Notes under the pieces: model-generated
What the model was told of the DNA's origin: nothing
What the model saw: the letters and a program-made list of their open reading frames with translations, nothing else
Databases searched by the model: none
Position numbers and translations under genes: made by a program
Source: Haliotis rufescens
Taxonomy: Eukaryota
DNA length: 64,000 nt
NCBI RefSeq assembly: GCF_023055435.1
Contig: NW_025963924.1
Location: 6,138,001 to 6,202,000 of the forward strand
Direction of reading: 5' to 3'
In this document: positions 919-51,999 of the stretch, in pieces
Layout of the letters: every line of letters begins with the position of its first letter
Position numbering within the stretch: position 1 is the stretch's first letter

Positions 919-1358
919 GGAGCTGTAGATGAGATCCGAACCGTCTACAAGAAAACTAATGCATTTAAATGTTGGAGCTGATCTGGATAAAATGACATGC
1001 CATATGTAGTATGTTAAACAGGTTTGTGTCAACGTTTTCATCCGAATATATCAATATAATAACAAATTAACATTTTGTATAACATGTAAACTACCGTTTT
1101 GGGTGCAATCGAATGTCCTAATATCCCAGTTTATAAGTCAGATATCTTATCTTCGGCGACATTTAGTGATCTTGGGTGAAGAAGGAAACCACAGATAAAG
1201 GTCAGCCATATACAGAGTGCATACGTTTTGAACTGAAGTTAAAAGATAAATACAAACATACACACTTTATTAAATAAAAAATTATAATTGTTCTGGCATG
1301 CTTAATATAACCATTACTATTTAGATTTAAAGAAGTATCAAACGATTACACCGCACAA

Positions 1359-1523
1359 TGAGTGAGTGAGTTTGGTTTTACGCCGCTTTTAGCAATATTC
1401 CAGCAATATCACGGCGGGGGACACCAGAAATGGGCTTCACACATTGTACCCATGTCGGGATTCGAACCCGGGTCTTCGGCGTGACGAGCGAACGCTTTAA
1501 CCACTAGGCTACCCGACCGCCCC
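1359..1523 (-). mobile_element. tRNA-derived SINE family 1
   Basis: A box TAGCCTAGTGG, B box GGTTCGAATCC, (ACTC)n tail, 12-bp TSD tacaccgcacaa; empty paralogous site near 16577. Confidence 0.9.
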
Positions 1524-1875
1524 TACACCGCACAACAAAAGTACACCTTTAATTGGGCTGAAATAGAAGGAAACGTTTCTTTCGCATTTGGCGTCACTAT
1601 TAATCCAACATAAAGATATGTTTAAATTTCCCATCGTTATATGAAGTGTTATATGCTCTGCTCTCTATAAAATGAACACAAACGTGTGTTGTTTGTATTA
1701 AAGAGCCAAGTTCAGTGCATGCACAGTTACCTTTGTCTGTTTTCTTGGTATGAACATTTTAAAAAGTGTTCCTCCCACTTTTTTCCAAAAACAACAACAT
1801 TCTACCTCCCTCCTCACTTTTAGAAACATTATTATTTTTATGTACCCCGGTATATATAAAAATATATGAACTCAC

Positions 1876-1979
1876 CTTAACAGGGCCAAAATTGCTACAG
1901 GACAGCAGCGTGTGGTAGTTATGTAATATCTCTCCTGAAATGCCAAGGTATATTTAGATATGGGAAATGCGCATGTGGT
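1876..1979 (-). promoter_or_regulatory. Gene A predicted core promoter and non-coding first exon
   Basis: AAG|GTGAGT donor at 1876/1875; 33-bp block 1947-1979 identical to gene B 17020-17052, including TATA-like TAAATATA on minus strand. Confidence 0.6.
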
Positions 1980-2283
1980 CATGTGTAATTTCTGCTGTGG
2001 AGTAAACATTTGTATAATAGGGATAGGTGTGAAGTAATAATCTGTCGTAGAATTACATCACATAAGTATTAAGGATCAAGATGCATATGGAGATAAGAAC
2101 AAAGGTTCAGGCAATACTTGAATGTTGTTTAACGCCACATCGGGAATATCTAAATCAGGACGACTTTTTGTTGTAAACATGTTTTTGGATCCCCAGGTTG
2201 ACGGAGATGCCTCAAAATTAAAGATACGTTGATTTTGTTCTTCGCCAAGTCTGTTAACAAACGTCAACATAAAATAGATAGCA

Positions 2284-15858: not shown

Positions 15859-15919
15859 ATGAATCCAGGGCGGCCAGCAGCACCATCAGCAAGCACAACA
15901 CGCGACTCTCACACATCAT
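15859..15919 (-). CDS. Gene B signal-peptide exon (secreted chitin-binding protein, 182 aa total)
   Basis: MMCESRVLCLLMVLLAALDS, T|GTGAGC phase-1 donor; joins in frame with 13404-13655 and 5736-5971 (61+252+236=549 nt). Upstream acceptor ttttcttgtag at 15946/15945. Confidence 0.85.
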
Positions 15920-16228
15920 GGAGCTGTAGATGAGATCCAAACCGTCTACAAGAAAACTAATGCATTAAAATATTGTAGCAGATACAGTTTGGATAAAACG
16001 AAATTTTAGTTGTATCTCAAACAGGTTGATGTACATTTGTATGTTGTTAATGACAAATTAGTATTTTGTAGTATTTAGTATTTTGTAGTATTAAGTATTT
16101 TGTATGACATGTAAATGGCCGTTTGGAATGTTTTGAGAAAAATCAAGTCACTTCCTATATCCATAATGTCCTTTGGTCCTAATGAACTTATGTCCTAGTA
16201 TATAAGTCAGGTACTTCATATACCCCGA

Positions 16229-16403
16229 GGGGCGGTCGGGTAGCCTAGTGGTTAAAGCGTTCGCTTGCATTGTCACGCCGAAGACGCGGGTTCAATTCAC
16301 GACATGGGTACAATGTGTGAAGCCCATTTCTGGTGTCCCCCGCCGTGATATTGCTGGAATATTGCTAAAAGCGGAGTAAAACCATACTCACTCACTCACT
16401 CAC
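16229..16403 (+). mobile_element. SINE family 1 containing the array's left breakpoint
   Basis: 13-bp TSD tcatataccccga (16216-16228, 16404-16416); only its tail and right TSD recur at the junctions. Confidence 0.9.
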
Positions 16404-16931
16404 TCATATACCCCGACACAGACAAGTGTCAGCCATATACAGTGTGCATGCCTTGGAGAACTGAAGTTGAAACGGCGAATACAAAAGTATGTATTAAATA
16501 TAGTTGTTCCGATATGTTTTATATAAGTTAACTAACATACCACTACCATACTGGCGAATATTGATGTATCATACGATTACTCCGCACAACAAAACTACAC
16601 CCATAATATGGCTAAATATAAAATGACATCTGAGCGTCACTTTTAGTCAAATAAAAACAAAAACTAATCATTTTTTTTCAACGCTTTATGATTTCGTTAT
16701 CCATAAAATACACATTTTATAAAAGAGCAGAGTTCAAAGTGTGCACAATTGTTTATGTTGGTATTCTTGGCAAAGTCAAGAAAATAATAGATAGTGTCTT
16801 CCACTTTTGGTTTTTAATCAAATAATATAAAAATTCTACCTCTTTCCTCATTTTTTTTTTAAAAAAAGCATTAATTATTTTTATACAGCCAGGCATATAC
16901 CGTCTGGTACATAAAATGAATATTACCTTAC

Positions 16932-17052
16932 CTTCACAGCGCTATAACGGCTACAGGGCAGCGGCTTGTGGTAGATATGTTATACATCTCCCTCTTTAAA
17001 TGTAGGGTTTAAATACCAGGGTATATTTAGATATGGGAAATGCGCATGTGGT
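16932..17052 (-). promoter_or_regulatory. Gene B predicted core promoter and non-coding first exon
   Basis: GAAG|GTAAGG donor at 16932/16931 in the same position as gene A's donor; TATA-like TAAATATA/TATTTAAA; 33-bp block conserved with gene A. Confidence 0.6.
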
Positions 17053-17154
17053 TATCTGTAATTTCTGGTATGTATTAAAACTTGGTTTGAAAAAGGATAG
17101 CACCAGTTGCTTGGAATAATTTGTCGTATAATATATATAACATATGTATTAAGG

Positions 17155-17314
17155 TGAGTAAGTATGGTTTTACGCCGCTTTTAGCAATATTCCAGCAATA
17201 TCACGTCGGGGGACACCAGAAATGGGCTTCACACATTGTACCCATGTCGGGAATCGAACCCAGGTATTCGGCGTGACGAGCGAACGCTTTACCACTAGAC
17301 TACCCGACCGCCCC
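17155..17314 (-). mobile_element. SINE family 1 (copied into each unit; further copies about 21577-21740, 50580-50733, 57925-58085, 63683-63856)
   Basis: TSD tatgtattaagg; A/B boxes. Confidence 0.9.
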
Positions 17315-17962
17315 TATGTATTAAGGAGTATAAAGGATGAATATGAGGATAAGAACAAGGGTTGGTACTTCTTTCAAGTAATTATCTTTAGATAATTCAT
17401 AAATTCTGTTCAACGCCAATATCTAAATTAAAGCATTTGTTATAAACATCTTTGTTAAAAAGCGAAGTGTTTGGATCCCAAGGTTTCAGGAGCTGCACAA
17501 AAATTACTCATAAATGTGTTTTGTTCTCGCATTTCAAACTATCACCTTGATGTCGAACGCCAGGCTGAGAAACAACAAGTAGTATCTTTAAAGGTCTTTG
17601 ATGTGACGCGGCCGTGAATCCAACCACCATCATTTCGCTCCCCGGCAGACACTCTATCCGTTAGACCACGGAGGCGGTCCGCTATTAACTGGAATGTCCC
17701 ATATGTATTAGGATTGCGTGTCATCGTGTTCCACCTCAAAGGACATACACATATTGTTATCTGAACAACAGATACATTTGTTGATGTGCAGGGTTGGTTT
17801 GTTGTTTTACGCCGCACTCAGCGATAGTTGATGCGCAGGGATAGCTAGTCTGTGGTGTAGAGCCCAAGCTACATACACGCAGGGGCACATGCACTACCAA
17901 CCGCACGCACACGTCTATTGTTATGATGCGACCAGGAGCCGAAGCATTGGCCTTCTACTCTC

Positions 17963-18913
17963 GAGGCAGACGCGCTATCCACTATTCCACGAAGGCGGTC
18001 TCAGACAGACGCGCTATCCACTACACCACGAAGGCGGTTTCAGGCAGACGCGCTATCCACTACACCACGAAGGCGGTCTCAGGCAGACGCGCTATCCACT
18101 ACCCCATGAAGGCGGTCTCAGGCAGACACTCTATCCACTACACCACGAAGGCGTTCTCAGGCAGACCCGCTTTCCACTACCCCACGAAGGCGGTCTCAGG
18201 TAGATGCGCTATCCACTACCCCACGAAGGCGGTCTCAGGCAGACGCGCTATCCACTACCCCACGAAGGCGTTCTCAGGCAGATGCGCTATCCACTACACC
18301 ACGAAGGCGGTCTCAGGCAGAAGCTCTATCCACTACACTATGAAGGCGGTCTCAAGCAGACGCGCTATCCACTACCCCACCAAGGTGGTCTCAGGCAGAC
18401 GCGCTATCCACTACACCACGAAGGCGGTCTCAGGCAGACGCTCTATCCACTACCCCACGAAGGCGGTCTCAGGCAGACGCTCTATCCACTACACCACGAG
18501 GGCGGTCTCAGGCAGACTCTCTATCCACTACACCACGAAGGCGGTCTCAGGCAGACGCGCCTCAACTACCCCACGAAGGCGGTCTCAGGCAGACGCGCTA
18601 TCCACTACCCTACAAAGGCGGTCTCAGGCAGACACTCTATCTACTACCCCAAGAAGGCGGTCTCAGGCAGACGCGCTATCGACTACCCCACGAAGGCGGT
18701 CTCAGGCAGACGCGCTATCCACTACCCCACGAAGGCGGCCTCAGGCAGATGCGCTGTCCACTACACCACAAAGGCGGTCTCAGGCAGACGCGCTATCCAC
18801 TACACCAAGAAGGCGGTCTCAGGCAGACGCGCTATCCACTACACCACGAAGGTGGTCTCAGGCAGACGCGCTATCCATTACCCCACGAAGGCGGTCTCAG
18901 ACAGACGTGCTAT
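17963..18913. repeat. 39-bp minisatellite (about 24 units; about 6 units at 34162-34412)
   Basis: Unit aggcagacgcgctatccactacaccacgaaggcggtctc. Confidence 0.95.
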
Positions 18914-19239
18914 CAAAGCAATAAAACAGAGGCTGATGACTTCAGTCTGGTGCGTGCATTAAATTCAGCACCATATGGTCTCGACAACTATCGTGTATGT
19001 TGAACATCCGTCACTGGCTACTTTATAACTTACCACTGACAGGAATATGGCCTCATAAAAACAAGTATGAAAGTTTGCATTAGTGTTGTTCCCACTAAAT
19101 AGGACGTCACTGACAGCTGCCTACTTTGTGCTGAGTCGTGATGCGTGTAGGTTTACCATTCAAACAAAGAGAGGGTGTTGGTGCACCAATAGCAGTCCTC
19201 ATATATGCGTACAAATGAAGAGATTGTTGTTAAGTGAAA

Positions 19240-20460
19240 GAGGTGAGTAAGTCGGTAGGTGAGGAAGTTTGGTTGGTATGAGTGAGGGAGTGAGTGAGGG
19301 AGGGAATGGGTTAATGGTTGAGTGAGTGAGTGGCTGGGTGGGGTGGTTGGTTGGTTGAGTGGATGGTTGAGTGAGTGAGTGAGTGGGTGGGTGGATGGGT
19401 GGGTGGGTGTTATTTGGTGGGTGGGTTTTATGGTTGAGTGGTTGGTTGAGTGAGTGAGTAGGTGGGTGGATGGGTGGTATGGTTGAGTGGTTGGTTGAGT
19501 TAGTGAGTGTTAGGGTGGGTGGTATGGTTGAGTGGTTGGTTGAGTAAGTGAGTGGGCGGGTGGGTGGGTGGGTGGTATGATTGAGTGGTTGGTTGAGTAA
19601 GTGAGTAGGTAGGTGGGTGGTATGGTTGAGTGAGTGAGTGGGTGGTATGTTTGAGCGGTTGGTTGGTTAAGTGAGTGAGTGGGTGGTATGTTTGAGCGGT
19701 TGGTTGGTTAAGTGAGTGAGTGGGTGGGTTGGTTGGTTTTATGGTTGAGTGGTTGGTTGAATGAATGAGTAGGTGGGTGTGTGGTATGGTTGAGTGGCTG
19801 GTTGGTTAAGTGAGTGAGTGGGTGGGTGGTTGTGTTTTATGGTTGAGTGGTTTGTTGAGTGAGTGTGTAGGTGGGTGGATGGGTGAGTGAGTGGGTGGTT
19901 GGGTGTTATTGTTGAGTGGTTGGTTGGTTGAATGAGTGGGTGGGTGGATAGGTGGTTGGAGGGTATGGTTGAGTGGTTGGTTGGTTAAGTGAGATAGTGA
20001 GTGAGTGATTGGGTTGGTGGGTGGTATTGTTGAGTGGTTGGTTGAGTTAGTGAGTAGGTGGGTGGGTGGGTGGTATGTTTGAGCGGTTGGTTGGTTAAGT
20101 GAGTGAGTGGGTGGTATGTTTGAGCGGTTGGTTGGTTAAGTGAGTGAGTGGGTGGGTTGGTTGGTTTTATGGTTGAGTGGCTGGTTGGTTAAGTGAGTGA
20201 GTGGGTGGGTGGTTGTGTTTTATGGTTGAGTGGTTTGTTGAGTGAGTGAGTAGGTGGGGGGATGGGTGAGTGTGTGGGTGGTTGGGTATTATTATTGAGT
20301 GGTTGTTTGGTTGAATGAGTGGGTGGGTGGTATGGTTGAGTGGTTGGTTGCTTAAGTGAGTGAGTGAGTGATTGGACGGATGGGTGGTATTTGGTATGAT
20401 TGAGTGGTTGAATAAGTGAGTGGGTTGATTGGTGAATGAATGGGTGGGTTGGTAACTTGA
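19240..20460. repeat. Complex (GAGT/GGGT/GGTT)n satellite (also about 26245-27330, 34740-36080, 42720-43860)
   Basis: C-poor, G/T-rich tetramer mosaic downstream of each C gene. Confidence 0.95.
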
Positions 20461-21251: not shown

Positions 21252-21484
21252 TCAAGCAGTCCGCGCAACGCACATCCTCTTGGCTTGATCGAAGATCTGT
21301 GGTCCGTTCTTCTGGTTGCACGTACCCGAATACACCATCCGTCCACCCACACACACGACGAAGTAGGGAAAGTCTTCCCTACCCACCCAGTGGTTCAAGC
21401 CGTCGGGAAGACCCTTGCAACTTGGGTAGCGCACCATGCAGGGCATGCAGTGAGCAGACAGGCACTGGTTCGCACGGTAGTCGC
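21252..21484 (-). CDS. Gene C1 exon 3 (Cys linker + third CBM14-like domain)
   Basis: gacag|GC; CDYRANQCLSAHCMPCMVRYPSCKGLPDGLNHWVGREDFPYFVVCVGGRMVYSGTCNQKNGPQIFDQAKRMCVARTA*. Confidence 0.92.
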
Positions 21485-22516: not shown

Positions 22517-22750
22517 ACTGACTGATGGCTTCGACTCTCTCACCACACTTCACCATGGTGTAGTGCTCGCACCGCTTAGTGATGACGTTGTAAAACTGGG
22601 GGTAGGGGCACTCGCTCAGATGTTCTGGCCACCTGAACCTTGTCGGAGCAGAGCAGTTGTAGTACTGGGCACAGTTGGTGGGGTGGGGGATCAAGGCACG
22701 GGACTCTGGAAGACAGATGACCGTCTCCGCTCGGGTGTCCTTCTTGGTAC
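22517..22750 (-). CDS. Gene C1 exon 2 (CBM14)
   Basis: 234 nt, phase 1-1; ICLPESRALIPHPTNCAQYYNCSAPTRFRWPEHLSECPYPQFYNVITKRCEHYTMVKC. Confidence 0.93.
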
Positions 22751-24482: not shown

Positions 24483-24711
24483 AATTGTCGTAGATGGATC
24501 CCTGGCCGACGCATGTTTTGGTCTCGGGGTCGAACACGCTGTTTGAACAGTTGAACTTGTACAGGATCTCATTGGTGCACACATAGAAGACCGAACAGTC
24601 ATCGGGATCTGGTCTGAAGTCGGGGTTGCCTTTAACCACACAACTACCCACTGATGTTGAAGCGGTTGCCATGGCCACGATTAAGCAAGCGAGTACAATT
24701 CGAAATGCCAT
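24483..24711 (-). CDS. Gene C1 exon 1 (signal peptide + CBM14); secreted 3x chitin-binding protein, 231 aa
   Basis: ACCATGG context; MAFRIVLACLIVAMATAS then CVVKGNPDFRPDPDDCSVFYVCTNEILYKFNCSNSVFDPETKTC; T|GTAAG donor; 229+234+233=696 nt open. Confidence 0.93.
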
Positions 24712-24804
24712 GGTGAAATGGAACTGCAGCGACACAAATTCACCTAAAGTACAGTTATACGTGAACTCACTGGGCTTAAACAGTTTTCTCGTATATTCCT
24801 GTGA

Positions 24805-24975
24805 ATTCTGATCTGAGTGAGAGATAACGGCGTATTTATACCTATAACAGACATGGAACGCCCACAAGGTATATAGTTTCCTGGCTTGTTTTTGTAACGT
24901 CACCGCTGTAGAGGATTCTGTTTGTCAAATCTGACAGCCGATTGAACTCGCGTTCATGATGTGATGTCACGTGCG
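24805..24975 (-). promoter_or_regulatory. Gene C core promoter (TATA + Inr + CRE-like/E-box); also TATA at 31976, 41309, 49187
   Basis: TATAAAT at 24840-24834 with Inr-like TCAGAAT whose A lies 31 nt downstream (about 24809); TGATGTCACGTG at 24962-24973. Confidence 0.7.
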
Positions 24976-25734
24976 CCACCTGGTGACAAATCAGCGATCC
25001 AACTGACTGACGGCCTGTACATCACCGCGGCGATAGGCTAGTGAGATGGGGGGGGGGGGGGGGGGGGGGGGGGGTGTTAGTAGGAGGAGACATGTCGTGA
25101 CGTGCCTGGTGATATCATTTTAATAATAGATCATATCCCTGAAATGGCATTTATAATATTAAAAAATAAAATACCCACCAGTACCATACTCACTCACTCA
25201 CTCACTCACTCATATACCCCGACACAGACAAGTGTCAGCCATATACAGTGTGCATGCCTTGGAGAACTGAAGTTGAAACGGCGAATACAAAAGTATGTAT
25301 TAAATATAATTCTTCTGATATGTTTTATATAAGTTAAATAATATACCACTACCATATTGGCGAATTTTGATGTATCATACGATGACTCCGCACAACAAAA
25401 CTACACCCATAATATGGCTAAATATAAAATGACATCTGAGCGTCACTTTAAGTCAAATAAAAACAAAAAATAATCTTTTTTTTTCAACGCTTTATGATTT
25501 CGTTATCCATAAAATACACATTATGTATAGAGCAGAGTGCAAAGTGTGCACAATTGTTTGTGTTGGTATTTTTGGCAAAGTCAAGAAAATAATAGATAGT
25601 GTTCCCACTTTTGGTTTTTAATAAAATAATTTTAAAATTCTAACTCTTTCCTTATTTTTATTTTAAAAAAAACATTTATTTTTTTATACAGCCAGACATG
25701 TACCGTCTGGTACATAAAATGGATATTACCTTAC

Positions 25735-25856
25735 CTTCACAGCGCTATAACGGCTACAGGGCAGCGGCTTGTGGTAGATATGTTATACATCTCCCTCTTT
25801 AAAATGTAGGGTTTAAATACCAGGGTATATTTAGATATGGGAAATGCGCATGTGGT
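25735..25856 (-). promoter_or_regulatory. Orphan duplicate of gene B promoter/first exon upstream of C1 (also 32898-33018 and 42211-42331)
   Basis: Near-identical to 16932-17052, with GAAG|GTAAGG donor intact. Confidence 0.65.
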
Positions 25857-28140
25857 TATCTGTAATTTCTGGTATGTATTAAAACTTGGTATGAAAAAGG
25901 ATAGCACGAGTTGCTTGGAATAATTTGTCATATAATATATATAACATTTGTATTAAGGTGAGTGAGTATGGTTTTACGCCGCTTTTAGCAATATTCCAGC
26001 AATATCACGGCGGGGGACACCAGAAATGGGCTTCACACATTGTACCCATGTCGAGAATTGAACCCAGGTCTTCGGCGTGACGAGGGAACGCTTTAACCAC
26101 TAGGCTACCCGACCGCCCCTATGTATTAAGGAGTATAAAGGATGAATATGAGGATAAGAACAAGGGTTGATACTTCTTTCAAGTAAAAATATTTAGGTAA
26201 TACATAAATTCTGTTCAACGCCAATATCTAAACATTATTATAAATTGGTAGTATGGTTGAGTGGTTGGTTGAGTGAGTGAGTAGGTGGGTGGGTGGTATG
26301 GTTGAGTGGGTGGTATGGTTGAGGTTGGATGTTATGGTTGAGTGGGTGGGTGGTTGAATGTTATGGCTGAGTGGTTGGTTGAGTGAGTGAGTAGGTGGGT
26401 GGGTGGTATGGTTGAGTGAGTGAGTGGGTGGTATGGTTGAGCGATTGGTTGGTTAAGTGAGTGAGTGGGTTGGTGGGTAGGTTTTATGGTTGAGTGGTTG
26501 TTGAGTGAGTGAGTAGGTGGGTGGATGGGTGGTATGGTTGAGTTGTTGGTTGAGTTAGTGAGTGGTTGGGTGGGTGGGTGTTATGGTTGAGGGGTTGGTT
26601 GAGTTAGTGAGTGGGTTGGTGGATGGGTGTTATGGTTGAGTGGTTGGTTGAGTTAGTGAGTAGGTAGGTGGGTGGTATGGTTGAGTGAGTGAGTGGGTGG
26701 TATGTTTGAGCGGTTGGTTGGTTAAGTGAGTGAGTGGGTGGGTTGGTGCGTTTACTGGTTGAGTGGTTGGTTGAGTGAATGAGTAGGTGGGTGGGTGGTA
26801 TGGTTGAGTGGTTGGTTGGTTAAGTGAGTGAGTGGGTGGGTGGGTGGGTTTTATGGTTGAGTGGTTTGTTGAGTGAGTGAGTAGGTGGGTGGGTGGATGG
26901 GTGAGTGAGTGGGTGGTTGGGTGTTATTGTTGAGTGGTTTGTTGGTTGAATGAGTGGGAGGGTGGATAGGGGGGTGGGTGGTATGGTTGAGTGGTTGGTT
27001 GGTTAAGTGAGTGATTGAGTGATTGGGTGGGTGGGTGGGTGGTATGGTTGAGTTAGTGAGTAGGTGGGTGGATGGGTGGTATGGTTGAGTGGTTGGTTGA
27101 GTGAGTGAGTAGGTGGGTGGATGGGTGAGTGAGTGGGTGGTTGGGTATTATTGTTGAGTGGTTGGTTGGTTGAATGAGTGGGTAGGTGGTATGGTTTAGT
27201 GGTTGGTTGGTTAAGTGAGTGAGTGAGTGATTGGGTGGGTGGGTGGCATTTGGTATGATTGAGTCCGACTGTGGTTGAATAAGTGAGTGGGTGGATTGGT
27301 GAATGAATGGGTGGGTTGGTAACTCGATTTGAGTAGGAATAAGAAGATATTTTGCACAGTGTACCCGAGACTCTACCCCCTTGCTGACACTACAAGATAG
27401 AATGTGATTGGTTAATAGACACCGAGAAAAGAAATAATTGGTAGAAATATTTATTCAATCAAGCATATTTACAACATACAATGTTCAATTTACACTGAAC
27501 TCATATTAACGGATATTCTAAGCGAGAATAAAACCCGAATCCGCTGGGGAATTGAGTTTAGATTTACAATCAAATTACACAACACTGTTAACACAACACA
27601 CAAACACAACACATTGATCATAATTACAAAGATTCAGAAATAAATAAACCGGGTGTTTATACCGGCTGCAATGGGACTTACAGAGTTAGTGTGTACACAT
27701 TCAATGACGGGCAGGTCAATACTTCAAGTGTTTAATACAAGCTTGGTACCATACAGAACACAATATTGTTCACAAACTCCAATATAATTTAGGCAACAGA
27801 CGGTTTTCATGGTAATGACTTAAATTTTTATTCACGTAAAATCACAAAGACTCTAGAAATCCTATTTAGGACGCGCATTTGTTAAATTTGATTCCTTGAA
27901 CACATGAAAGAAACTTGAATGTCTAAATTTGGATTTCTAAATGGCCACAACCAGTTATAGAATACGCTGAAGAAGTCCGGGAATGTGTAAAGGAAATTCC
28001 GGACTGCGGCACAAAAGTCCATCATCACGTGACCCCGAGGTGAATATGACTGCCAAATAAGGAATGACCAATCATGAAACAGGAAGTTCAGAAACAGTAC
28101 CAAGTGCAAGAAATTGAGAAAGTTTTTCATCTTCATTACT

Positions 28141-31853: not shown

Positions 31854-34800
31854 GGTGAAATGGAACTGCAGCGACACAAATTCACCTAAAGTACAGTTAT
31901 ACGTGAACTCACTGGGCTTAAACAGTTTTCTCGTATATTCCTGTGAATTCTGATCTGAGTGAGAGATAACGGCGTATTTATACCTATAACAGACATGGAA
32001 CGCCCACAAGGTATATAGTTTCCTGGCTTGTTTTTTGTAACGTCACCGCTGTAGAGGATTCTGTTTGTCAAATCTGACAGCTGATTGAACTCGCGTTCAT
32101 GATGTGATGTCACGTGCGCCACCTGGTGACAAATCAGCGATCCAACTGACTGACGGCTTGTACATCACCGCGGCGATAGGCTAGTGAGATGGGGGTGGGG
32201 GGTGGGTGGGTGGGGGGGGGGGGGGGGGGGGTGGGTGGTGTTAGTAGGAGGAGACATGTCGTGACGTGCCTGGTGATATCATTTTAATAATAGATCATAT
32301 CCCTGAAATGGCATTTATAATATGAAAAAATAAAATACCCACCTGTACCATACTCACTCACTCACTCACTCACTCATATACCCCGACACAGACAAGTGTC
32401 AGCCATATACAGTGTGCATGCCTTGGAGAACTGAAGTTGAAACGGCGAATACAAAAGTATGTATTAAATATAATTGTTCTGATATGTTTTATATAAGTTA
32501 AATAATATACCACTACCATATTGGCGAATTTTGATGTATCATACGATGACTCCGCACAACAAAACTACACCCATAATATGGCTAAATATAAAATGACATC
32601 TGAGCGTCACTTTAAGTCAAATAAAAACAAAAAATAATCATTTTTTTTCAACGCTTTATGATTTCGTTATCCATAAAATACACATTATATATAGAGCAGA
32701 GTGCAAAGTGTGCACAATTGTTTGTGTTGGTATTTTTGGCAAAGTCAAGAAAATAATAGATAGTGTTCCCACTTTTGGTTTTTAATTAAATAATTTTAAA
32801 ATTCTAACTCTTTCCTCATTTTTATTTAAAAAAAACATTTATTTTTTTATACAGCCTGACATGTACCGTCTGGTACATAAAATGGATATTACCTTACCTT
32901 CACAGCGCTATAACGGCTACAGGGCAGCGGCTTGTGGTAGATATGTTATACATCTCCCTCTTTAAATGTAGGGTTTAAATACCAGGGTATATTTAGATAT
33001 GGGAAATGCGCATGTGGTTATCTGTAATTTCTGGTATGTATTAAAACTTGGTATGAAAAAGGATAGCACGAGTTGCTTGGAATAATTTGTCATATAATAT
33101 ATATAACATTTGTATTAAGGTGAGTGAGTATGGTTTTACGCCGCTTTTAGCAATATTCCAGCAATATCACGGCGGGGGACACACATTGTACCCATGTCGG
33201 GAATTGAACCCAGGTCTTCGGCGTGACGAGGGAACGCTTTAACCACTAGGCTACCCGACCGCCCCTATGTATTAAGGAGTATAAAGGATGAATATGAGGA
33301 TAAGAACAAGGGTTGATACTTCTTTCAAGTAAAAATATTTAGGTAATACATAAATTCTGTTCAACCCCAATATCTAAACATTATTATAAACATCTTTGTA
33401 AAAAAGCGAAGTATTTGGATCCTAAGGTTTCAGGAGCTGCACACACAAAAAACTCATAAATGTGTTTTGTTCTCGCATTTCAAACTATCACCTTGATGTT
33501 GAATGCCAGGCTGAGAAACAACAAGTAGTATCTTTAAAGGTCTTTGATGTGACGCGGCCATGAATCCAACCACCATCATTTCGCTCCCTGGCAGACAATC
33601 TATCCGTTAGACCACGGAGGCGGTCCGCTCTTAACTGGAATGTCCCATATGTATTAGGATTGGGTGTCATCGTGTTCCACCTCAAAGGACATACACATAT
33701 TGTTATCTGAACAACAGATACATTTGTTGATGTGCAGGGTTGGTTTGTTGTTTTACGCCGCACTCAGCGATAGTTGATGCGCAGGGATAGCTAGTCTGTG
33801 GTGTAGAGAGCTCAATCTACATACACGCAGGGACACATGCACTACCAACCGCACGCACACGCACACACAAGTATACACGCACGGACGCACACATGCATGC
33901 GCGCACAGACACACAATCACGCGCGCGCACGCACACAGACACGCGTGCGCACGGACACATACTAGCACACAGTCATAACTTTCTGAGCTTCATTTGTTCT
34001 GAGCAATGAAAGATGGAGTGTTTGTGTGTGGTTGACTCTGACCCGACCAGTCCTTGTTTTAGCCGCTTAATGTCGAGCGACAGGCAGAGAAACAAGTACC
34101 ATCCTTTAACGTCTTTTGTTATGACGCGACCAAGAGCCGAAGCATCGACCTTCCACTCTCGAGGCAGACGCGTTATCCACTACATCATGAAGGCGGTCTC
34201 AGGCAGACAATCTATCCACTACACCACGAAAGCTGTCTCAGGCAGACGTGCTATCCACTACACCACGAAGGCGGTCTCAGGCAGACGCGCTATCCACTAC
34301 CCCACGAAGGCGGTCTCTAATCAGACGCGCTATCCACTACCCCACGAAGGCAGTCTCAGGCAGACGCGCTATCCACTACCCCACGAAGGCGGTCTCAGGC
34401 AGACGTGCTATCAAAGCAATAAAACAGAGGCTGATGACTTCAGTCTGGTGCGTGCATTAAATTCAGCACAATATGGTCTCGACAACTATCGTGTATGTTG
34501 AACATCTGTCACTGGCTACTTTATAACTTACCACTGACAGGACATGGCCTCACAAAAATCAAGTATGAAAGTTTGCATTAGTGTTGTTCCCACTAAATAG
34601 GACGTCACTGACAGCTGCCTACTTTGTGCTGAGTCGTGATGCGTGTAGGTTTACCATTCAAACAAAGAGAGGGTGTTGGTGCATCAATAGCAGTCCTCCA
34701 ATATGCGCACAGATGAACAGATTGTTGTTAAGTGACAGAGGTGAGTAAGTCGGTAGGTGAGGAAGTTTGGGTGGTATGAGTGAGGGAGTAGGTTTATGGT

Positions 34801-36889
34801 TGAGTGAGTGAGTGGCTGGGTGGGGTGGTTGGTTGGTTGAGTGGATGGTTGAGTGAGTGAGTGAGTGAGTCTGGGCGTTATGGTTGAGTGGGTGGGTGGG
34901 TGTTACGGTTGAGTGAGTGGGTGGGTGGGTGTTATGGTTGAGTGGTTGGTTGAGTGAGTGAGTATGTTGGTGGATGGTATGGTTGAGTGAGTGGTTGGTA
35001 TGGTTGAGTGGGTGGGTGGGTGGGTGTGATGGTTGGGTGGTTGGTTGAGTGAGTGAGTAGGTGGGTGGGTGGTATGGTTGAGTAAGTGAGTGGGTGGTAT
35101 GGTTGAGCGATTGGTTGGTTAAGTGAGTGAGTGGGTTGGTGGGTGGGTTTTATGGTTGAGTGGTTGGTTGAGTGAGTGAGTAGGTGAGTGGATGGGTGGT
35201 ATGGTTGAGTGGTTGGTTGAGTATGTGAGTGGTTGGGTGGGTGGGTGTTATGGTTGAGGGGTTGGTTGAGTGAGTGAGTAGGTGGGTGGGTGGTATGGGT
35301 GAGTGAGTGAGTGGGTGGTATGGATGAGCGATTGGTTGGTTAAGTGAGTGAGTGGGTTGGTGGGTGGGTTTTATGGTTGAGTGGTTGGTTGAGTGAGTGA
35401 GTAGGTGGGTGGGTGGGTGTTATGGTTGAGGGGTTGGTTGAGTTAGTGAGTAGGTAGGTGGATGGTATGGTTGAGTGAGTGAGTGGGTGGTATGTTTGAG
35501 CGGTTGGTTGGTTAAGTGAGTGAGTGGGTGGGTTGGTGCGTTTACTGGTTGAGTGGTTGGTTGAGTGAATGAGTAGGTGGGTGGGTGGTATGGTTGAGTG
35601 GTTGGTTGGTTAAGTGAGTGAGTGGTTGGGTGGGTGGGTTTTATGGTTGAGTGGTTTGTTGAGTGAGTGAGTAGGTGGGTGGATGTGTGAGCGAGTGGGT
35701 GGATAGGGGGTGGGTGGTATGGTTGAGTGGTTGGTTGGTTAAGTGAGTGAGTGAGTGATTGGGTGGGTGGGTGGTATGGTTGAGTGGTTGGTTGAGTTAG
35801 TGAGTAGGTGGGTGGGTGGGTGGGTTGTCATGGTTGAGTGGTTGGTTGAGTGAGTGAGTAGGTGGATGGATGGGTGAGTGAGTGGGTGGTTGGGTATTAT
35901 TGTTGACTGGTTGGTTGGTTGAATGAGTGGGTAGGTGGTATGGTTTAGTGGTTGGTTGGTTAAGTGAGTGAGTGAGTGATTGGGTGGGTGGGTGGCATTT
36001 GGTATGATTGAGTCCGACTGTGGTTGAATAAGTGATTGGGTGGATTGGTGAATGAATGGGTGGGTTGGTAACTCGATTTGAGTAGGAATAAGAAGATATT
36101 TGGCACAGTGTACCCGAGACTCTACCCCCTTGCTGACACTACAAGATAGAATGTGATTGGTTAATAGACACCGAGAAAAGAAATAATTGGTAGAAATATT
36201 TATTCAATCAAGCATATTTACAACATACAATGTTCAATTTACACTGAACTCATATTAACGGATATTCTAAGCGAGAATAAAACCCGAATCCGCTGGGGAA
36301 TTGAGTTTAGATTTACAATCAAATTACACAACACGGTTTACACAACACACAAACACAACACATTGATCATAATTACAAGGATTCAGAAATAAATAAACCG
36401 GGTGTTTATACCGGCTGCAATGGGACTTACAGAGTTAGTGTGTACACATTCAATGACGGGCAGGTCAATACTTCAAGTGTTTAATACAAGCTTGGTACCA
36501 TACAGAACACAATATTGTTCACAAACTCCAATATAATTTAGGCAACAGACGGTTTTCATGGTAATGACTTAAATTTTTATTCACGTAAAATCACAAAGAC
36601 TCTAGAAATCCTATTTAGGACGCGCATTTGTTAAATTTGATTCCTTGAACACATGAAAGAAACTTGAATGTCTAAATTTGGATTTCTAGATGGCCACAAC
36701 CAGTTATAGAATACGCTGAAGAAGTCCGGGAATGTGTAAAGGAAATTCCGGACTGCGGCACAAAAGTCCATCATCACGTGACCCCGAGGTGAATATGACT
36801 GCCAAATAAGGAATGACCAATCATGAAACAGGAAGTTCAGAAACAGTACCAAGTGCAAGAAATTGAGAAGGTTTTTCATCTTCATTACT

Positions 36890-41186: not shown

Positions 41187-44100
41187 GGTGAAATGGAACT
41201 GCAGCGACACAAATTCACCTAAAGTACAGTTATACGTGAACTCACTGGGCTTAAACAGTTTTCTCGTATATTCCTGTGAATTCTGATCTGAGTGAGAGAT
41301 AACGGCGTATTTATACCTTTAACAGACATGGAACGCCCACAAGGTATATAGTTTCCTGGCTTGTTTTTGTAACGTCACCGCTGTAGAGGATTCTGTTTGT
41401 CAAATCTGACAGCTGATTGAACTCGCGTTCATGATGTGATGTCACGTGCGCCACCTGGTGACAAATCAGCGATCCAACTGACTGACGGCTTGTACATCAC
41501 CGCTGCGGTTGGCTAGTGAGATGGGGGGTGGGGGGTGGGGGGTGGGGGTGGTGTTAGTAGGAGGAGACATATCGTGACGTGCCTGGTGATATCATTTTAA
41601 TAATAGATCATATCCCTGAAATGGCATTTATAATAAGAAAAAATAAAATACCCACCTGTACCATACTCACTCACTCACTCACTCACTCATATACCCCGAC
41701 ACAGACAAGTGTCAGCCATATACAGTGTGCATGCCTTGGAGAACTGAAGTTGAAACGGCGAATACAAAAGTATGTATTAAATATAATTGTTCTGATATGT
41801 TTTATAAAAGTTAAATAATATACCACTACCATATTGGCGAATTTTGATGTATCATACGATGACTCCGCACAACAAAACTACACCCATAATATGGCTAAAT
41901 ATAAAATGACATCTGAGCGTCACTTTAAGTCAAATAAAAACAAAAAATAATCATTTTTTTTCAACGCTTTATGATTTCGTTATCCATAAAATACACATTA
42001 TATATAGAGCAGACTTCAAAGTGTGCACAATTGTTTGTGTTGGTATTTTTGGCAAAGTCAAGAAAATAATAGATAGTGTTCCCACTTTTGGTTTTTAATT
42101 AAATAATTTAAAAATTCTAACTCTTTCCTCATTTTTATTTTAAAAAAACATTTATTTTTTTATACAGCCTGACATGTACAGTCTGGTACATAAAATGGAT
42201 ATTACCTTACCTTCACAGCGCTATAACGGCTACAGGGCAGCGGCTTGTGGTAGATATGTTATACATCTCCCTCTTTAAATGTAGGGTTTAAATACCAGGG
42301 TATATTTAGATATGGGAAATGCGCATGTGGTTATCTGTAATTTCTGGTATGTATTAAAACTTGGTATGAAAAAGGATAGCACGAGTTGCTTTGAATAATT
42401 TGTCATATAATATATATAACATTTGTATTAAGGTGAGTGAGTATGGTTTTACGCCGCTTTTAGCAATATTCCAGCAATATCACGGCGGGGGACACCAGAA
42501 ATGGGCTTCACACATTGTACCCATGTCGAGAATTGAACCCAGGTCTTAGGCGTGACGAGGGAACGCTTTACCACTAGGCTACCCGACCGCCCCTATGTAT
42601 TAAGGAGTATAAAGGATGAATATGAGGATAAGAACAAGGGTTGATACTTCTTTCAAGTAAAAATATTTAGGTAATTCATAAATTCTGTTCAACGCCAATA
42701 TCTAAACATTATTATAAATTGGTAGTATGGTTGAGTGGTTGGTTGAGTGAGTGAGTAGGTGGGTGGGTGGTATGGTTGAGTGGGTGGTATGGTTGAGGTT
42801 GGATGTTATGGTTGAGTGGGTGGGTGGTTGAATGTTATGGCTGAGTGGTTGGTTGAGTGAGTGAGTAGGTGGGTGGGTGGTATGGTTGAGTGAGTGAGTG
42901 GGTGGTATGGTTGAGCGATTGGTTGGTTAAGTGAGTGAGTGGGTTGGTGGGTAGGTTTTATGGTTGAGTGGTTGTTGAGTGAGTGAGTAGGTGGGTGGAT
43001 GGGTGGTATGGTTGAGTTGTTGGTTGAGTTAGTTAGTGTTAGGGTGGGTGGTATGGTTGAGTGGTTGGTTGAGTTAGTGAGTGTTAGGGTGGGTGGTATG
43101 GTTGAGTGGTTGGTTGAGTAAGTGAGTGGGTTGGTGGATGGGTGTTATGGTTGAGTGGTTGGTTGAGTTAGTGAGTAGGTAGGTGGGTGGTATGGTTGAG
43201 TGAGTGAGTGGGTGGTATGTTTGAGCGGTTGGTTGGTTAAGTGAGTGAGTGGGTGGGTTGGTGCGTTTACTGGTTGAGGGGTTGGTTTAGTGAATGAGTA
43301 GGTGGGTGGGTGGTATAGTTGAGTGGTTGGTTGGTTAAGTGAGTGAGTGGGTGGGTGGTTGTGTTTTATGGTTGAGTGGTTTGTTGAGTGAGTGAGTAGG
43401 TGGGTGGGTGGATGGGTGGATGGGTGAGTGAGTGGGTGGTTGGGTGTTATTGTTGAGTGGTTGGTTGGTTGAATGAGTGGGAGGGTGGATAGGGGGTGGG
43501 TGGTATGGTTGAGTGGTTGGTTGGTTAAGTGAGTGATTAAGTGATTGGGTGGGTGGGTGGGTGGGTGGTATGGTTGAGTTAGTGAGTAGGTGGGTGGATG
43601 GGTGGTATGGTTGAGTGGTTGGTTGAGTGAGTGAGTAGGTGGGTGGATGGGTGAGTGAGTGGGTGGTTGGGTATTATTGTTGAGTGGTTGGTTGGTTGAA
43701 TGAGTGGGTAGGTGGTATGGTTTAGTGGTTGGTTGGTTAAGTGAGTGAGTGAGTGATTGGGTGGGTGGGTGGCATTTGGTATGATTGAGTCCGACTGTGG
43801 TTGAATAAGTGAGTGGGTGGATTGGTGAATGAATGGGTGGGTTGGTAACTCGATTTGAGTAGGAATAAGAAGATATTTTGCACAGTGTACACGAGACTCT
43901 ACCCCCTTGCTGACACTACAAGATAGAATGTGATTGGTTAATAGACACCGAGAAAAGAAATAATTGGTAGAAATATTTATTCAATCAAGCATATTTACAA
44001 CATACAATGTTCAATTTACACTGAACTCATATTAACGGATATTCTAAGCGAGAATAAAACCCGAATCCGCTGGGGAATTGAGTTTAGATTTACAATCAAA

Positions 44101-49064: not shown

Positions 49065-51999
49065 GATGAAATAAAACTTCAGCGACACAAATTCACCTAA
49101 AGTACAGTTATACGTGAACTCACTGGGCTTAAACAGTTTTCTCGTATAATCCTGTGAATTCTGATCTGAGTGAGAGATAACGGCGTATTTATACCTATAA
49201 CAGTGATGGAACGCCCACAAGGTACATGTTTATAGTTTCCTGGCTTGTTTTTTGTAACGTCACCGCTGTAGAGGATTCTGTTTGTCAAATCTGACATCTG
49301 ATTGGACTCGCGTTCATGATGTGACGTCACGTGCGCCACCTGGTGACAAATCAGCGATCCAACTGACTGACGGCTTGTACATCAACGCGGCGATAGGCTA
49401 GTGAGATGGGGGGGGGGGGGGGGGGGTATTAGTAGGAGGAGACATATCGTGACGTGCCTGGTGATATCATTTTAATAATAGATCATATCCCTGAAATGGC
49501 ATTTATAATAAGAAAAAAAAATACCCACCTGTGGCTACCAGAGTTGTAGGCTGTTTAACAAACATATTGATATTTGGTATTTGTTTAAATGTTTATTTTT
49601 CGTATTTAATCAAGATTGCATCCATCCATAATTTAAAAGTTTAATTAATTAATTACTTGATTAATTAGTAAGTCACATTTAAGGCGTTAACTACACCCTT
49701 TTATGTTTTTTCTCCCCTGTTAATAAAACACAAAAAATGCAAATTCCAAAAACTTAATCCGTAGTATCACCACAAATCATCGCCAGTGTTTGTACCGCTC
49801 CCCTTTCTCATACACACAGCCCCTTGTATCTTAGCATCTTCGGAAACAGGCGGGAATGTCCGAACGGAAGCCAAAAAGATGGAGGTATATCTTATCAACT
49901 TCGGATACCGACAACCTCGGACCTCCTGATATGGTAGTGATAGTCGCTGGCGCGTGTTAGGCGTCTACAATATCAAATATAGGATTAGCCCATTTATTTC
50001 CGAAAATAGCCGAAGAGACACCAACTGTTAAAGATGAGCACTGGTCGGGCAATAGATAAAGAAGTCCAACAAGTGGTTCAACAAATATAGCTGCTCGTGT
50101 CGCCACTTTATTTTCAAAGGTGTTATACGTCAACGAAACAGTGTCATTGTTGCCTCTTTAACAAATTTCTATATTGACACAGTTATAGTTAAGTATCGGC
50201 AGTAAGAATGTAGCATTCGTCTCGTCACGAGTAAAGTCACGTGGGTCATCTGTCTTACAGACGTGTTTATAGATGAGAATATTTAGATCGGGAACTTACG
50301 GTAATAACACCATGTAATCCTATAGCGCCATGTATCTTTTTGTTGGGGGTCATAATCCCCCCCAAAGACCGATCCTTGGAAATTATGGCATGTGTTAAGT
50401 AGCCTGTTTTCGTCTTAAAGGGATGAAGATGTATTTAGTGATGCTTTTCACGCTTTGCAAACAGTGTTATGGAAATTATGACATTGCTAATCTGGCTTTT
50501 GTAGCAGAGATCACGTCGCTGTTAAACTTTGAATAACGTGGTATAACTGACTATATACCAGTACAGCAGGAGCGGTGGATAATATTTTACGCCGTTGTTA
50601 GCAATATTCCAGCAATATCACGATGGGGGGAAACAGAAATGGGCTTCACACATTGTATCCATGTGGAGAATCAAATCCGGGTCTTCGGCGTGACAAGCGA
50701 ACGATTTATCCACTGAGCAACCCCACAGCCCCGAGTACAAGAAAATAGTATCGGTTTGTTCAGTTGTTTATATTGCTAGGCGTTTTAGCTTAAGAGAGCG
50801 GCTTTATCTTTTAATAATACAGTAACTAATAATACCTTACATGAAATGTGCATTTTTTCAAATATGCAACAATACTTTACCCAAATAAATTACGAATATA
50901 CACAAATTCAGTTAAATAATTCTTAAGAGACTGTAATTGTACATGAGGTTGTTTTATCATAACCTTTTGTATGGGACTTATTCAACAAAAGTAATATTTT
51001 CCCCATTCTAAAATACTTAGAGCATATTTCCTGTAATTAAGCATGTACCAAGAAGCATGTTTTTATGCAGTGCGTCATGTTACGACTAGTTGTGACGTAA
51101 ACAGTATCCTCTAACAATATGTCCGTATTGTCTGATGTATCATATACAACTTCTGACAAGTTGAAGTGTAATTATATTTATGACAATTCAACTCCCGGAT
51201 CCATTCCATAATTTATACCCATCGCATGACTTCACATAGGTGTGCTTAGAATGTCCTGATTTAATAAACAGATCCGGGGATAAACAATAAACACTGAAAT
51301 ATCTTTCTTCACATTGCAAGCCCTGAACAATAACGCCACCGGATACCCTTTTAGCAATTTAATTGTAAAGTACAGCCCACGCAGGGATACGCTTGCACGA
51401 ACCGAATAACGAAGAGTTTAATATGCCGCCCATGCAATACAATTGAAGAGATTCCTCAGAAAGTCAGTAACTTGTTTGTCAAGGGAGAGATTTTTTTTCT
51501 GTCGTCAACTAGGAGGAGTCGTGTTTAAGAAAGTCATTCACTAGCCCCAAACGCGGGGGGTGGGGTGGGGGGGGGGGGGGGGTGGGTGAGCTATTCTGGG
51601 GAAAGAGGTTAGCTTGCTGTCAAAAGTTCGCCCCCGTGGTGCGTATATGTACAAACGTCTGGTTAGACGGGATAACAGATGCGCTCTAACCACACAATGA
51701 TGAAGTCATTAATTACGCCGTTTCTTAAATAAAACACTATTTGGGTAAATTGTAAATATCGAGTTCGCGGCTTGAACGTGAATGAAGACTCGTTATTATG
51801 AGTTCACGGTGGATTTGGGGTAGATTTGTCTCAAGAGAATATGCTGGTACAAGTTGTCAGTTGTCACTGTGTCTAAAACTAAGAGTTCCCTTCTTCATTT
51901 CCAGCAGTATTGTACTCATACAACTCCCTGCAGATTTATGTCTCGCACCACTGACGTACCGACACGCTGAGTCACGTCACCTACGTACTCCACCTAAAA

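What the first reader, a model, noticed from the sequence alone, without database searches (positions are those of the whole stretch)
24700..25860. Candidate promoter capture: gene B's promoter and first exon sit upstream of C1-C3, and only those copies carry a CAG next to the ATG
Seen: each unit starts inside gene B's 5'-UTR intron, so B's promoter block, non-coding exon and GAAG|GTAAGG donor lie on the same strand about 1 kb upstream of C1, C2 and C3 (donors at 25735, 32898, 42211), with no B acceptor downstream. C4 keeps its native upstream DNA. Just before the ATG, C1-C3 read ttgtgtcgctgCAG|ttccatttcaccATG while C4 reads ttgtgtcgctgAAGttttatttcatcATG (4 changes in 16 nt). A shared ctgtactttAG lies 20 nt further up. 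The predicted chimeric intron (24724-25734, 1011 nt) is close to B's own (15946-16931, 986 nt). Inference: three copies may have two promoters and be expressed in B's pattern, i.e. regulatory rewiring by one duplication event. The pyrimidine tract is weak and the direction of the CAG/AAG change is unknown.
Basis: partly seen in the sequence, partly recalled or inferred. Interest (0 to 1): 0.85.

Follow-up and report, generated by a model that had tools for sequence, protein, structure and literature searches.

The report
Neighbour's promoter duplicated upstream of abalone genes
In red abalone, a tandem duplication put an intact copy of one chitin-binding gene's promoter, first exon and splice donor 1 kb upstream of three copies of the neighbouring gene, but no RNA data could be reached to show that these extra promoters are used.

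Summary
All genes lie on the minus strand of Haliotis rufescens DNA.

**Structure (shown)**
- Gene C encodes a 231-aa secreted chitin-binding (CBM14) protein. It has four intact tandem copies.
- The duplication unit runs from 470 bp upstream of C's ATG to the middle of the 5'-UTR intron of the downstream paralogue B.
- C1-C3 therefore each carry B's core promoter, non-coding exon 1 and GAAG|GTAAGG donor about 1.0 kb upstream. C4 does not.

**New results**
- With the older paralogue C5 as outgroup, CAG/TTCC/ACC in C1-C3 is derived and C4's AAG/TTTT/ATC is ancestral. Four of ten stem substitutions fall within 14 nt (P≈0.007).
- The orphan promoter/exon blocks have no substitution over 168 nt, against 4.6% divergence around them (P≈0.002-0.0003).
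- B's exon 1 and donor are conserved across family paralogues.

- C1-C3 keep their own TATA promoter.
- The CAG has an ordinary pyrimidine tract, ranking about 20th of 46 AGs. Better acceptors lie upstream.
- One gene conversion could explain the invariant block.

The arrangement is a real, lineage-restricted tandem-promoter structure of a known kind. Promoter capture is plausible but unproven.

The parts
25723..25890 (-). Orphan copy of B's core promoter (TATTTAAA at 25819-25812), non-coding exon 1 (ends 25735) and the first 12 intron bases, upstream of C1. It has no substitution against native B and one extra T.
25733..25734 (-). GT of the orphan 5' splice site GAAG|GTAAGG.
25192..25734 (-). 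5' 545 nt of B's 5'-UTR intron carried in the duplication unit. It aligns to B 16386-16931.
25180..25192 (-). Duplication junction. The head of a SINE in B's intron, (GAGT)n ATGGT, is joined to C's position -470. Microhomology is a few bases at most, and no SINE lies at the C4 side.
24712..25179 (-). C's own upstream DNA retained in C1-C3. It holds TATAAATA at 24840-24833, a CRE-like site (24965 G>A in C1-C3), a CCAAT box (24945 C>T in C1-C3) and a 5'UTR of about 100 nt.
24713..24726 (-). Cluster of four derived substitutions in C1-C3 (A>C making CAG at 24726-24724, TT>CC at 24721-24720, T>C at 24713).
24744..24748 (-). Shared TTTAG|G, the alternative candidate acceptor. It lies 11-12 nt after a TATAAC branch-point-like motif.
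24483..24711 (-). C1 exon 1: signal peptide plus CBM14 domain 1.
22517..22750 (-). C1 exon 2: CBM14 domain 2.
21252..21484 (-). C1 exon 3: Cys-rich C-terminal module and stop codon.
32886..33052 (-). Orphan B promoter/exon 1 block upstream of C2 (donor exon base 32898; C2 ATG 31853).
42199..42365 (-). Orphan B promoter/exon 1 block upstream of C3 (donor exon base 42211; C3 ATG 41186).
49065..49529 (-). C4's native upstream region with the ancestral AAG/TTTT/ATC next to ATG 49064. No B block lies beyond it.
16920..17086 (-). Native B core promoter (TATTTAAA 17015-17008) and non-coding exon 1 (ends 16932).
15946..16931 (-). B's 5'-UTR intron (986 nt). It contains the SINE at 16228-16395 where the duplication broke.
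15859..15945 (-). B exon 2: ATG at 15919-15917 and the signal peptide MMCESRVLCLLMVLLAALDS.

Best explanation
**Shown.** In Haliotis rufescens the ancestral gene pair is C followed by B. Both genes encode secreted chitin-binding CBM14 proteins and lie on the same strand. The pair underwent a tandem segmental duplication whose unit runs from 470 bp upstream of C's ATG to the middle of B's 5'-UTR intron. The junction copy (about 4.6% diverged) was later re-duplicated twice (about 1% diverged). The array on the minus strand is now C4, oB, C3, oB, C2, oB, C1, B. Each oB is an intact copy of B's core promoter, non-coding exon 1 and strong 5' splice site. It sits 1.0 kb upstream of a complete C gene that also keeps its own TATA promoter. 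The CAG beside the ATG of C1-C3 is a derived state.

**Inferred.** C1-C3 are tandem-promoter genes. Their own promoter probably remains the main one. The orphan B promoters are probably still competent and supply an upstream alternative start. Transcripts from that start become productive only if the orphan donor splices into an AG in C's leader (24813/24808, 24744 or 24724), helped by exon definition from C exon 1's strong GTAAGT donor. Which acceptor is used, if any, is not known.
For: - **Architecture and junction:**
- **Donors:** four exact donor copies.
- **Gene C:** all four copies are intact with 231 codons. CBM14 is recognised in exons 1 and 2. RefSeq lists four 231-aa H. rufescens proteins on this contig.
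- **Gene B:** its coding exons are confirmed by orthologue proteins in H. cracherodii and H. rubra, where the C and B orthologues carry adjacent LOC numbers.
- **B exon 1:** the exon and its GTAAG donor are conserved in family paralogues L011-L016, so it is a real family-wide 5' exon.
- **Orphan block invariance:** 0 substitutions occur in a 168-nt run (permutation P=0.002). None occur in the 133-nt block defined beforehand from paralogue conservation, where 7.3 are expected (P=0.0003). Split by branch, P=0.004 for fixed B-versus-orphan sites and P=0.09 for sites variable among orphans.
- **CAG cluster:** it is derived, and 4 of 10 stem changes fall within 14 nt (P=0.007). C5 is a valid outgroup in every partition.
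- **C's own promoter:** the TATA box and 470 bp of upstream DNA are retained in C1-C3.
Against:
- The invariant block could come from one gene-conversion tract from B before the recent triplication.
- The four clustered changes could be a single multi-nucleotide mutation, or a gain in start-codon context (CACCATGG).
- The CAG's pyrimidine tract is 9 of 18, and 46 AGs lie between the donor and the ATG.
- The B-derived intron fragment is AT-rich. I read AATAAA-like runs in it from the sequence, and these could end orphan transcripts early.
Confidence: 0.45

Rival explanations
1. The orphan B promoters are the functionally important promoters of C1-C3. Their exon 1 splices to the newly gained CAG at 24724 (and its C2 and C3 equivalents), removing a 1011-nt chimeric intron. 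C1-C3 are therefore expressed in B's pattern, and the CAG was fixed by selection.
For: - CAG is derived on exactly the branch that acquired the B promoter, within a significant cluster of changes.
- The orphan blocks are invariant.
- Two other stem changes hit the CRE-like and CCAAT motifs of C's own promoter, which C4 and C5 conserve (24965, 24945). This fits relaxation of the native promoter.
- The spliced leader would be short, with CACCATGG around the start (read from the sequence).
- C's own intron-1 acceptor has an equally poor pyrimidine tract.
Against: - The TATA box and most of C's promoter are intact in C1-C3.
- The CAG is not the best acceptor. Sites at 24813/24808 and 24744 also give leaders free of upstream ATGs.
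- An AG at 24744 lies between the likely branch point and the CAG.
- By my own rough estimate, two motif hits among six upstream changes has P of about 0.1, and one of them is a CpG transition.
- There are no RNA data.
Confidence: 0.2
2. Inert bystanders. The orphan blocks are silent, or make only abortive transcripts. C1-C3 are expressed solely from their own promoters, like C4. The block's invariance reflects youth plus one gene-conversion tract from B. The CAG cluster is a neutral multi-nucleotide mutation or a small change of translation context.
For: - C's own promoter is retained.
- Within the recent orphan triplication, only 2.2 substitutions are expected in the block, so zero is unremarkable (P=0.09).
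- Gene conversion is active in this family. C5 exon 1 is 3.5% diverged against 15.7% for the promoter, and C1 exon 3 is mosaic.
- The CAG is not a strong acceptor.
- Most tandem duplicates that cross gene boundaries are thought to be neutral or deleterious (PMC4069613).
Against: A conversion tract would have to coincide with the promoter/exon block, which is 133-168 nt of 1022 nt (P about 0.004 for the fixed differences). All promoter motifs and the donor remain intact in three copies. A cluster of four changes has P=0.007 if the changes were independent.
Confidence: 0.3
3. The orphan blocks act without chimeric splicing into C. Either they work as nearby enhancer-like elements that pass B-type regulatory input to C's own promoter, or they are distal alternative promoters of B itself. 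In the second case, their identical exon 1 would splice across C1 to B exon 2 at 15946.
For: The block holds the family-wide conserved motif CAGATAACCACATGCGCATTTCCCATATCTAAATATAC about 1 kb from C's TATA box. Exon 1 is identical in all four copies, so a long-range B transcript would be indistinguishable from normal B mRNA. Constraint on the blocks would be explained.
Against: This is inference only. A transcript reaching B would have to read through C1's 3' end and skip C1's two good acceptors. Enhancer action is untestable from sequence.
Confidence: 0.05

Closest known systems
Chimeric genes and recruited sequence formed by tandem duplications that do not respect gene boundaries (Drosophila surveys, Rogers et al. 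2014, PMC4069613)
   Same: A tandem duplication with one breakpoint inside a gene, and parental genes in parallel orientation, places the 5' end of one gene upstream of another. Such constructs are expected to change regulation.
   Different: The break lies in a 5'-UTR intron, so only the promoter and a non-coding exon are transferred. The recipient gene is complete and keeps its own promoter. The result is a tandem-promoter whole gene, not a coding chimera. The construct was then re-amplified to three copies.
Alternative-promoter genes with a non-coding first exon spliced to a common acceptor near the ATG (general metazoan gene architecture; from my own knowledge)
   Same: If the orphan promoter is used, C1-C3 would have a distal promoter with a 5'-UTR exon and a proximal TATA promoter, both giving the same protein.
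   Different: No transcript shows this here. The acceptor would have to be new or cryptic.
B-type members of the same abalone CBM14 cluster (gene B, gene A at window 844-2026, loci L012-L017)
   Same: They share the same conserved promoter motif, a roughly 50-nt non-coding exon 1, a GTAAG donor, and a 5'-UTR intron of about 0.9-1 kb (reckoned for B and A only).
   Different: In those genes the donor pairs with a good acceptor, TTTTCTTGTAG|ACGG, 26 nt before the ATG. C-type genes have no such acceptor ancestrally.

Membership tests
Tandem-duplication chimera (5' end of gene 1 placed upstream of gene 2) | Direct tandem repeat units with a definable junction that joins two formerly separate sequences | tested here: met
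   Junction at 25180-25192, and its equivalents in C2 and C3, joins B intron position 16386 to C position -470.
Tandem-duplication chimera (5' end of gene 1 placed upstream of gene 2) | At least one breakpoint inside a gene, with parental genes in parallel orientation | tested here: met
   The break lies in B's 5'-UTR intron. B and C are both on the minus strand.
Tandem-duplication chimera (5' end of gene 1 placed upstream of gene 2) | The transferred 5' end includes a promoter and a usable splice donor | tested here: met
   TATA box, family-conserved motif, exon 1 and GAAG|GTAAGG are identical to native B. Promoter activity itself was not tested.
Tandem-duplication chimera (5' end of gene 1 placed upstream of gene 2) | A chimeric transcript is made | not testable with these tools
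The protein database holds only RefSeq models for these genes.
CBM14 / peritrophin-A chitin-binding proteins (PF01607) | Pfam CBM_14 match above the gathering score | tested here: met
   C exon 1 scores 37.3 bits, C exon 2 31.7 bits and the B exon 35.4 bits, against a cut-off of 22.1. C exon 3 and B's last exon gave no match at E<=0.01.
CBM14 / peritrophin-A chitin-binding proteins (PF01607) | Secreted: N-terminal signal peptide | tested here: inconclusive
   Hydrophobic N-termini MAFRIVLACLIVAMATAS and MMCESRVLCLLMVLLAALDS were read from the sequence. No signal-peptide predictor was run.
Functional 3' splice site at CAG 24724 | Polypyrimidine tract, a branch point 18-40 nt upstream, and no intervening AG | tested here: inconclusive
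   The tract has 9 of 18 pyrimidines, equal to C's own intron-1 acceptor. TATAAC lies about 32 nt upstream, but an AG at 24744 lies in between. No trained splice model was available.

The most novel reading that the evidence does not exclude
Selection maintains the three orphan B promoters, and C1-C3 have evolved a new 3' splice site (AAG>CAG) directly in front of their start codon. A neighbour's promoter and 5' exon would then drive them. That would be a complete promoter capture, from duplication to a new acceptor, caught within about 5% sequence divergence, and it would rewire part of a lineage-specific chitin-binding gene expansion in abalone.
Probability: 0.15. Interest if true: 0.6.

Novelty: new member of a known kind. 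Interest (0 to 1): 0.4.

Why it matters
Tandem duplications that cut across gene boundaries are a recognised way of shuffling promoters. Well-dated natural examples are few, especially ones where the follow-up steps can be read from the sequence: retention of the captured promoter, gain of an acceptor, and decay of the old promoter. None that I know of comes from molluscs.

This locus has a built-in control in C4, which has its native promoter only. It also has an outgroup, C5, and three replicate junction copies. A single RNA-seq junction search would therefore settle whether the rewiring happened.

The genes are secreted chitin-binding proteins. Related domains occur in mollusc shell matrix and gut linings, so altered expression of three of four copies could matter for those tissues. 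If the orphan promoters are silent, the locus is simply a recent gene-family expansion with passenger DNA.

Tried and rejected
- **RNA evidence.** As a result, no orthologous DNA from H. cracherodii, H. rubra or H. asinina could be read. The 5'UTR polarity rests on the in-genome paralogue C5, plus orthologue proteins for exon 1.
- **NAHR between SINEs as the duplication mechanism.** Rejected. The break is in a SINE head on the B side, but C4's side has no SINE.
- **Micro-conversion donor for the CAG/TTCC/ACC cluster.** A whole-genome pattern search found only the three copies themselves and chance-level 2-mismatch hits.
- **C4-C5 gene conversion that would invalidate the polarity.** Rejected. 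The C4-C5 distance exceeds the C1-C4 distance in exon 1, the 5'UTR and the promoter.
- **Protein tree to date the expansion against H. cracherodii.** Unresolved polytomy.
- **Literature search for the five LOC identifiers.** No papers.
- **GTGAGT...TATAAC...TTTAG stretch in C's 5'UTR as a native intron.** It is only about 27 nt long and the AG is absent in C5, so I rejected it.
- **Spliced C and B models.** These were searched exon by exon by reference. The joined proteins were not built or submitted to any search.
Full report
**What is there**

The window is eukaryotic DNA. Protein hits and RefSeq cluster members identify it as Haliotis rufescens (red abalone), contig C146 (13.1 Mb), positions 6138001-6202000. 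All relevant genes lie on the minus strand.

- **Gene C.** It has three exons. In C1 these are 24711-24483, 22750-22517 and 21484-21252, or 229+234+233 nt, giving 231 codons. It encodes a protein with a hydrophobic N-terminus. Pfam recognises CBM14 (peritrophin-A chitin-binding) domains in exons 1 and 2.
- **Copies of C.** Four intact tandem copies have ATGs at 24711 (C1), 31853 (C2), 41186 (C3) and 49064 (C4). They correspond to RefSeq LOC124146563, LOC125383477, LOC125383478 and LOC124146565.
- **Paralogue C5.** This older copy (LOC124146562) lies about 18 kb beyond the window's start.
- **Gene B.** It lies downstream of C1 and is a paralogue. Its signal-peptide exon is 15945-15859 (ATG at 15919), with further exons near 13.6 kb and 5.9 kb. 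Orthologue proteins of H. cracherodii and H. rubra confirm these. In H. rubra the C and B orthologues carry adjacent LOC numbers, so the order C then B is ancestral.

**Check of the observation**

- The 17-mer GCGCTGTGAAGGTAAGG occurs exactly four times, with 0.02 expected by chance. The last exon bases are 16932, 25735, 32898 and 42211.
- C1-C3 read GCTGCAG|TTCCATTTCACC|ATG and C4 reads GCTGAAGTTTTATTTCATCATG. CTGTACTTTAG is shared 20 nt upstream.
- The intron lengths of 1011 nt and 986 nt are correct.

**Anatomy of the duplication**

- C1 24300-25179 aligns with C4 48653-49529 (95%). C1 25192-26232 aligns with B 16386-17427 (95%).
- The junction at 25180-25192 joins the head of a SINE in B's intron, (GAGT)n ATGGT, to position -470 of C. 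C4 has no SINE at that point, and microhomology is a few bases at most, so this was not recombination between SINEs.
- The unit is therefore 470 bp of C upstream DNA, the whole of C, an intergenic satellite, B's promoter, B's exon 1, and the first 545 nt of B's intron.
- B differs from the three orphan blocks by 4.5-4.6%. The orphans differ from one another by 0.9-1.35%. This indicates one founding duplication followed by two recent re-duplications of the junction copy.
- H. cracherodii RefSeq has only one protein in the 90% cluster of C. A protein tree cannot resolve whether the expansion followed the species split.

**Is B's exon 1 a real exon?**

A whole-genome search with the block found weaker matches at many other places on the same contig. 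Aligned, the motif CAGATAACCACATGCGCATTTCCCATATCTAAATATAC is conserved in L010, L011, L014 and L016. The segment CATAACTACCACAAGC...CTGT.AAG|GTAAG, including the donor, is conserved in L011-L016. Together with a TATA box (TATTTAAA) about 80 nt upstream of the donor, this supports a family-wide promoter plus a 5' non-coding exon of about 50 nt. The transcription start itself is not known.

1. **Polarity.**
   - C5 reads GGCTGAAGTTTTATTTCGTCATGG, so AAG/TTTT/.TC is ancestral and CAG/TTCC/ACC arose on the stem of C1-C3.
   - C5 is a valid outgroup. The C4-C5 distance exceeds the C1-C4 distance in exon 1 (8 against 3 of 229), the 5'UTR (12 against 5 of 104) and the promoter (31 against 8).
   - At the two exon-1 stem changes (Ala>Ser, Lys>Asn), the H. 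cracherodii orthologue agrees with C4.
2. **Clustering.** Over 560 aligned bases the C1-C3 stem has 10 derived substitutions and C4 has 5. Four of the ten lie in 24713-24726, and the simulated probability of such a cluster is 0.007. No donor for a micro-conversion exists elsewhere in the genome.
3. **Orphan block invariance.**
   - Among B and the three orphans, 56 of 1045 columns carry substitutions. None falls in a 168-nt run (B 17086-16920) that coincides with the promoter core, exon 1 and donor (permutation P=0.002).
   - For the 133-nt block defined beforehand from paralogue conservation, 7.3 substitutions are expected and 0 are seen (P=0.0003). Split by branch, P=0.004 for fixed B-versus-orphan differences and P=0.09 for variation among orphans.
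   - C1 carries one extra T between the TATA box and the exon.
4. **Hits on C's own promoter.** Two further stem changes hit motifs of C's own promoter that C4 and C5 conserve: TGACGTCA>TGACATCA at 24965 and CCAAT>TCAAT at 24945. This is suggestive only. One is a CpG transition, and by my rough estimate two such hits among six changes has P of about 0.1.

**Evidence against**

- C1-C3 keep TATAAATA (24840-24833) and all 470 bp of native upstream DNA, so they do not need another promoter.
- Between the orphan donor and the ATG there are 46 AGs. By pyrimidine content the CAG (9 of 18) ranks about twentieth.
- Stronger tracts precede 25038, 25267 and 24813/24808, and TTTAG|G at 24744 is also better.
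- Acceptors at 24813, 24808 and 24744 would also give leaders without upstream ATGs (read), so the CAG is not required for a productive chimera.
- The AG at 24744 lies between the best branch-point-like motif (TATAAC) and the CAG.
- In the CAG's favour, C's own intron-1 acceptor is just as pyrimidine-poor, and exon 1's strong GTAAGT donor could help define a weak upstream acceptor. The second point is inference.
- The invariance of the orphan block could be produced by one conversion tract from B before the recent triplication. Conversion is evidently active in this family.

**What could not be done**

- The protein collection holds only RefSeq models for these genes, with no transcript-derived ORFs.
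- No paper mentions the loci.
- Spliced models were searched exon by exon by reference. The joined step was left out.

**Verdict**

The structure is real and exactly as described. It is a lineage-restricted example of a known kind of event: a tandem duplication across gene boundaries that places one gene's 5' end upstream of another (PMC4069613). It differs in that only a promoter and a non-coding exon were moved, in front of a complete gene that keeps its own promoter.

Two sequence signals, the derived and clustered CAG and the invariant orphan blocks, point toward use of the captured promoter. Neither is decisive, and there are no RNA data.

My probabilities:

| Reading | Probability |
|---|---|
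| Tandem-promoter genes in which the orphan promoter contributes through some acceptor | 0.45 |
| Inert passengers | 0.30 |
| Enhancer-like element or distal promoter of B | 0.05 |

Noticed in passing
window 21252-21484 (C1 exon 3): C1 exon 3 differs from C2-C4 by 9-10 nonsynonymous and only 1-2 synonymous codons. Several C1 states match the H. cracherodii orthologue or C5 (LSAHC, RYPS, SGTC, PQIF). This suggests a mosaic or converted exon, or retained ancestral states, not simple fast evolution.
   Followed up: partly
window exons 1-2 of C1-C4 (24483-24711, 22517-22750 and equivalents): Every codon difference among the four copies in exons 1 and 2 is nonsynonymous (0 synonymous), while non-coding DNA is 1-5% diverged. 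This may reflect diversifying or relaxed selection, but the numbers are small.
   Followed up: partly
L019 / window -17763 to -17993 (C5 exon 1): C5 exon 1 is only 3.5% diverged from C4. Its promoter is 15.7% diverged and its exons 2-3 about 17%. The first ~150 coding bases are identical, synonymous sites included. This points to old gene conversion or unusually strong constraint on the signal peptide and first CBM14 domain.
   Followed up: partly
window 24945 and 24965 (and equivalents in C2, C3): C1-C3 carry derived changes in the CCAAT box (>TCAAT) and in the palindromic CRE-like TGACGTCA (>TGACATCA) of C's own promoter. Both motifs are conserved in C4 and C5.
   Followed up: partly
window 24744-24771: C's 5'UTR contains GTGAGT..TATAAC..TGTACTTTAG within about 27 nt. 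It looks like a collapsed intron (donor, branch point, acceptor). The AG is CG in C5.
   Followed up: partly
window 25048-25075, 32211-32260, 41530-41570, 49412-49436: A homopolymer C/G tract about 340 bp upstream of each C ATG varies greatly in length and interruption among the four copies.
   Followed up: no
window 19270-20450, 26250-27300, 34770-35900, 42720-43700: A (GAGT)n/(GGGT)n-type satellite with periods of 45-57 nt and extreme GC skew lies between each C 3' end and the next B-type promoter block. Its length and insertion point differ between units. Minisatellites of 39 nt (17959-18914, 34157-34412) and 43 nt (in C intron 1) are also present.
   Followed up: no
L010 about 1500-1666 (G000:C146:6114100-6114244): The B-type promoter downstream of C5 keeps the conserved motif, but a repeat-like insertion interrupts its exon 1. 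This older C-B pair may therefore have a disabled B-type 5' exon.
   Followed up: no
window 16932-16985 and orphan copies: B exon 1 holds ATG TAT AAC ... CTG TGA, a 17-codon upstream ORF that ends 2 nt before the donor. It counts only if transcription starts upstream of it. The ATG is not conserved in paralogues L010 and L011.
   Followed up: no
window 844-2026: A further B-type gene (gene A) has a conserved signal-peptide exon (…MMRECRVLCLLMVLL…) and its own copy of the family promoter and 5' exon at 1859-2026 (73% identical to B's).
   Followed up: partly
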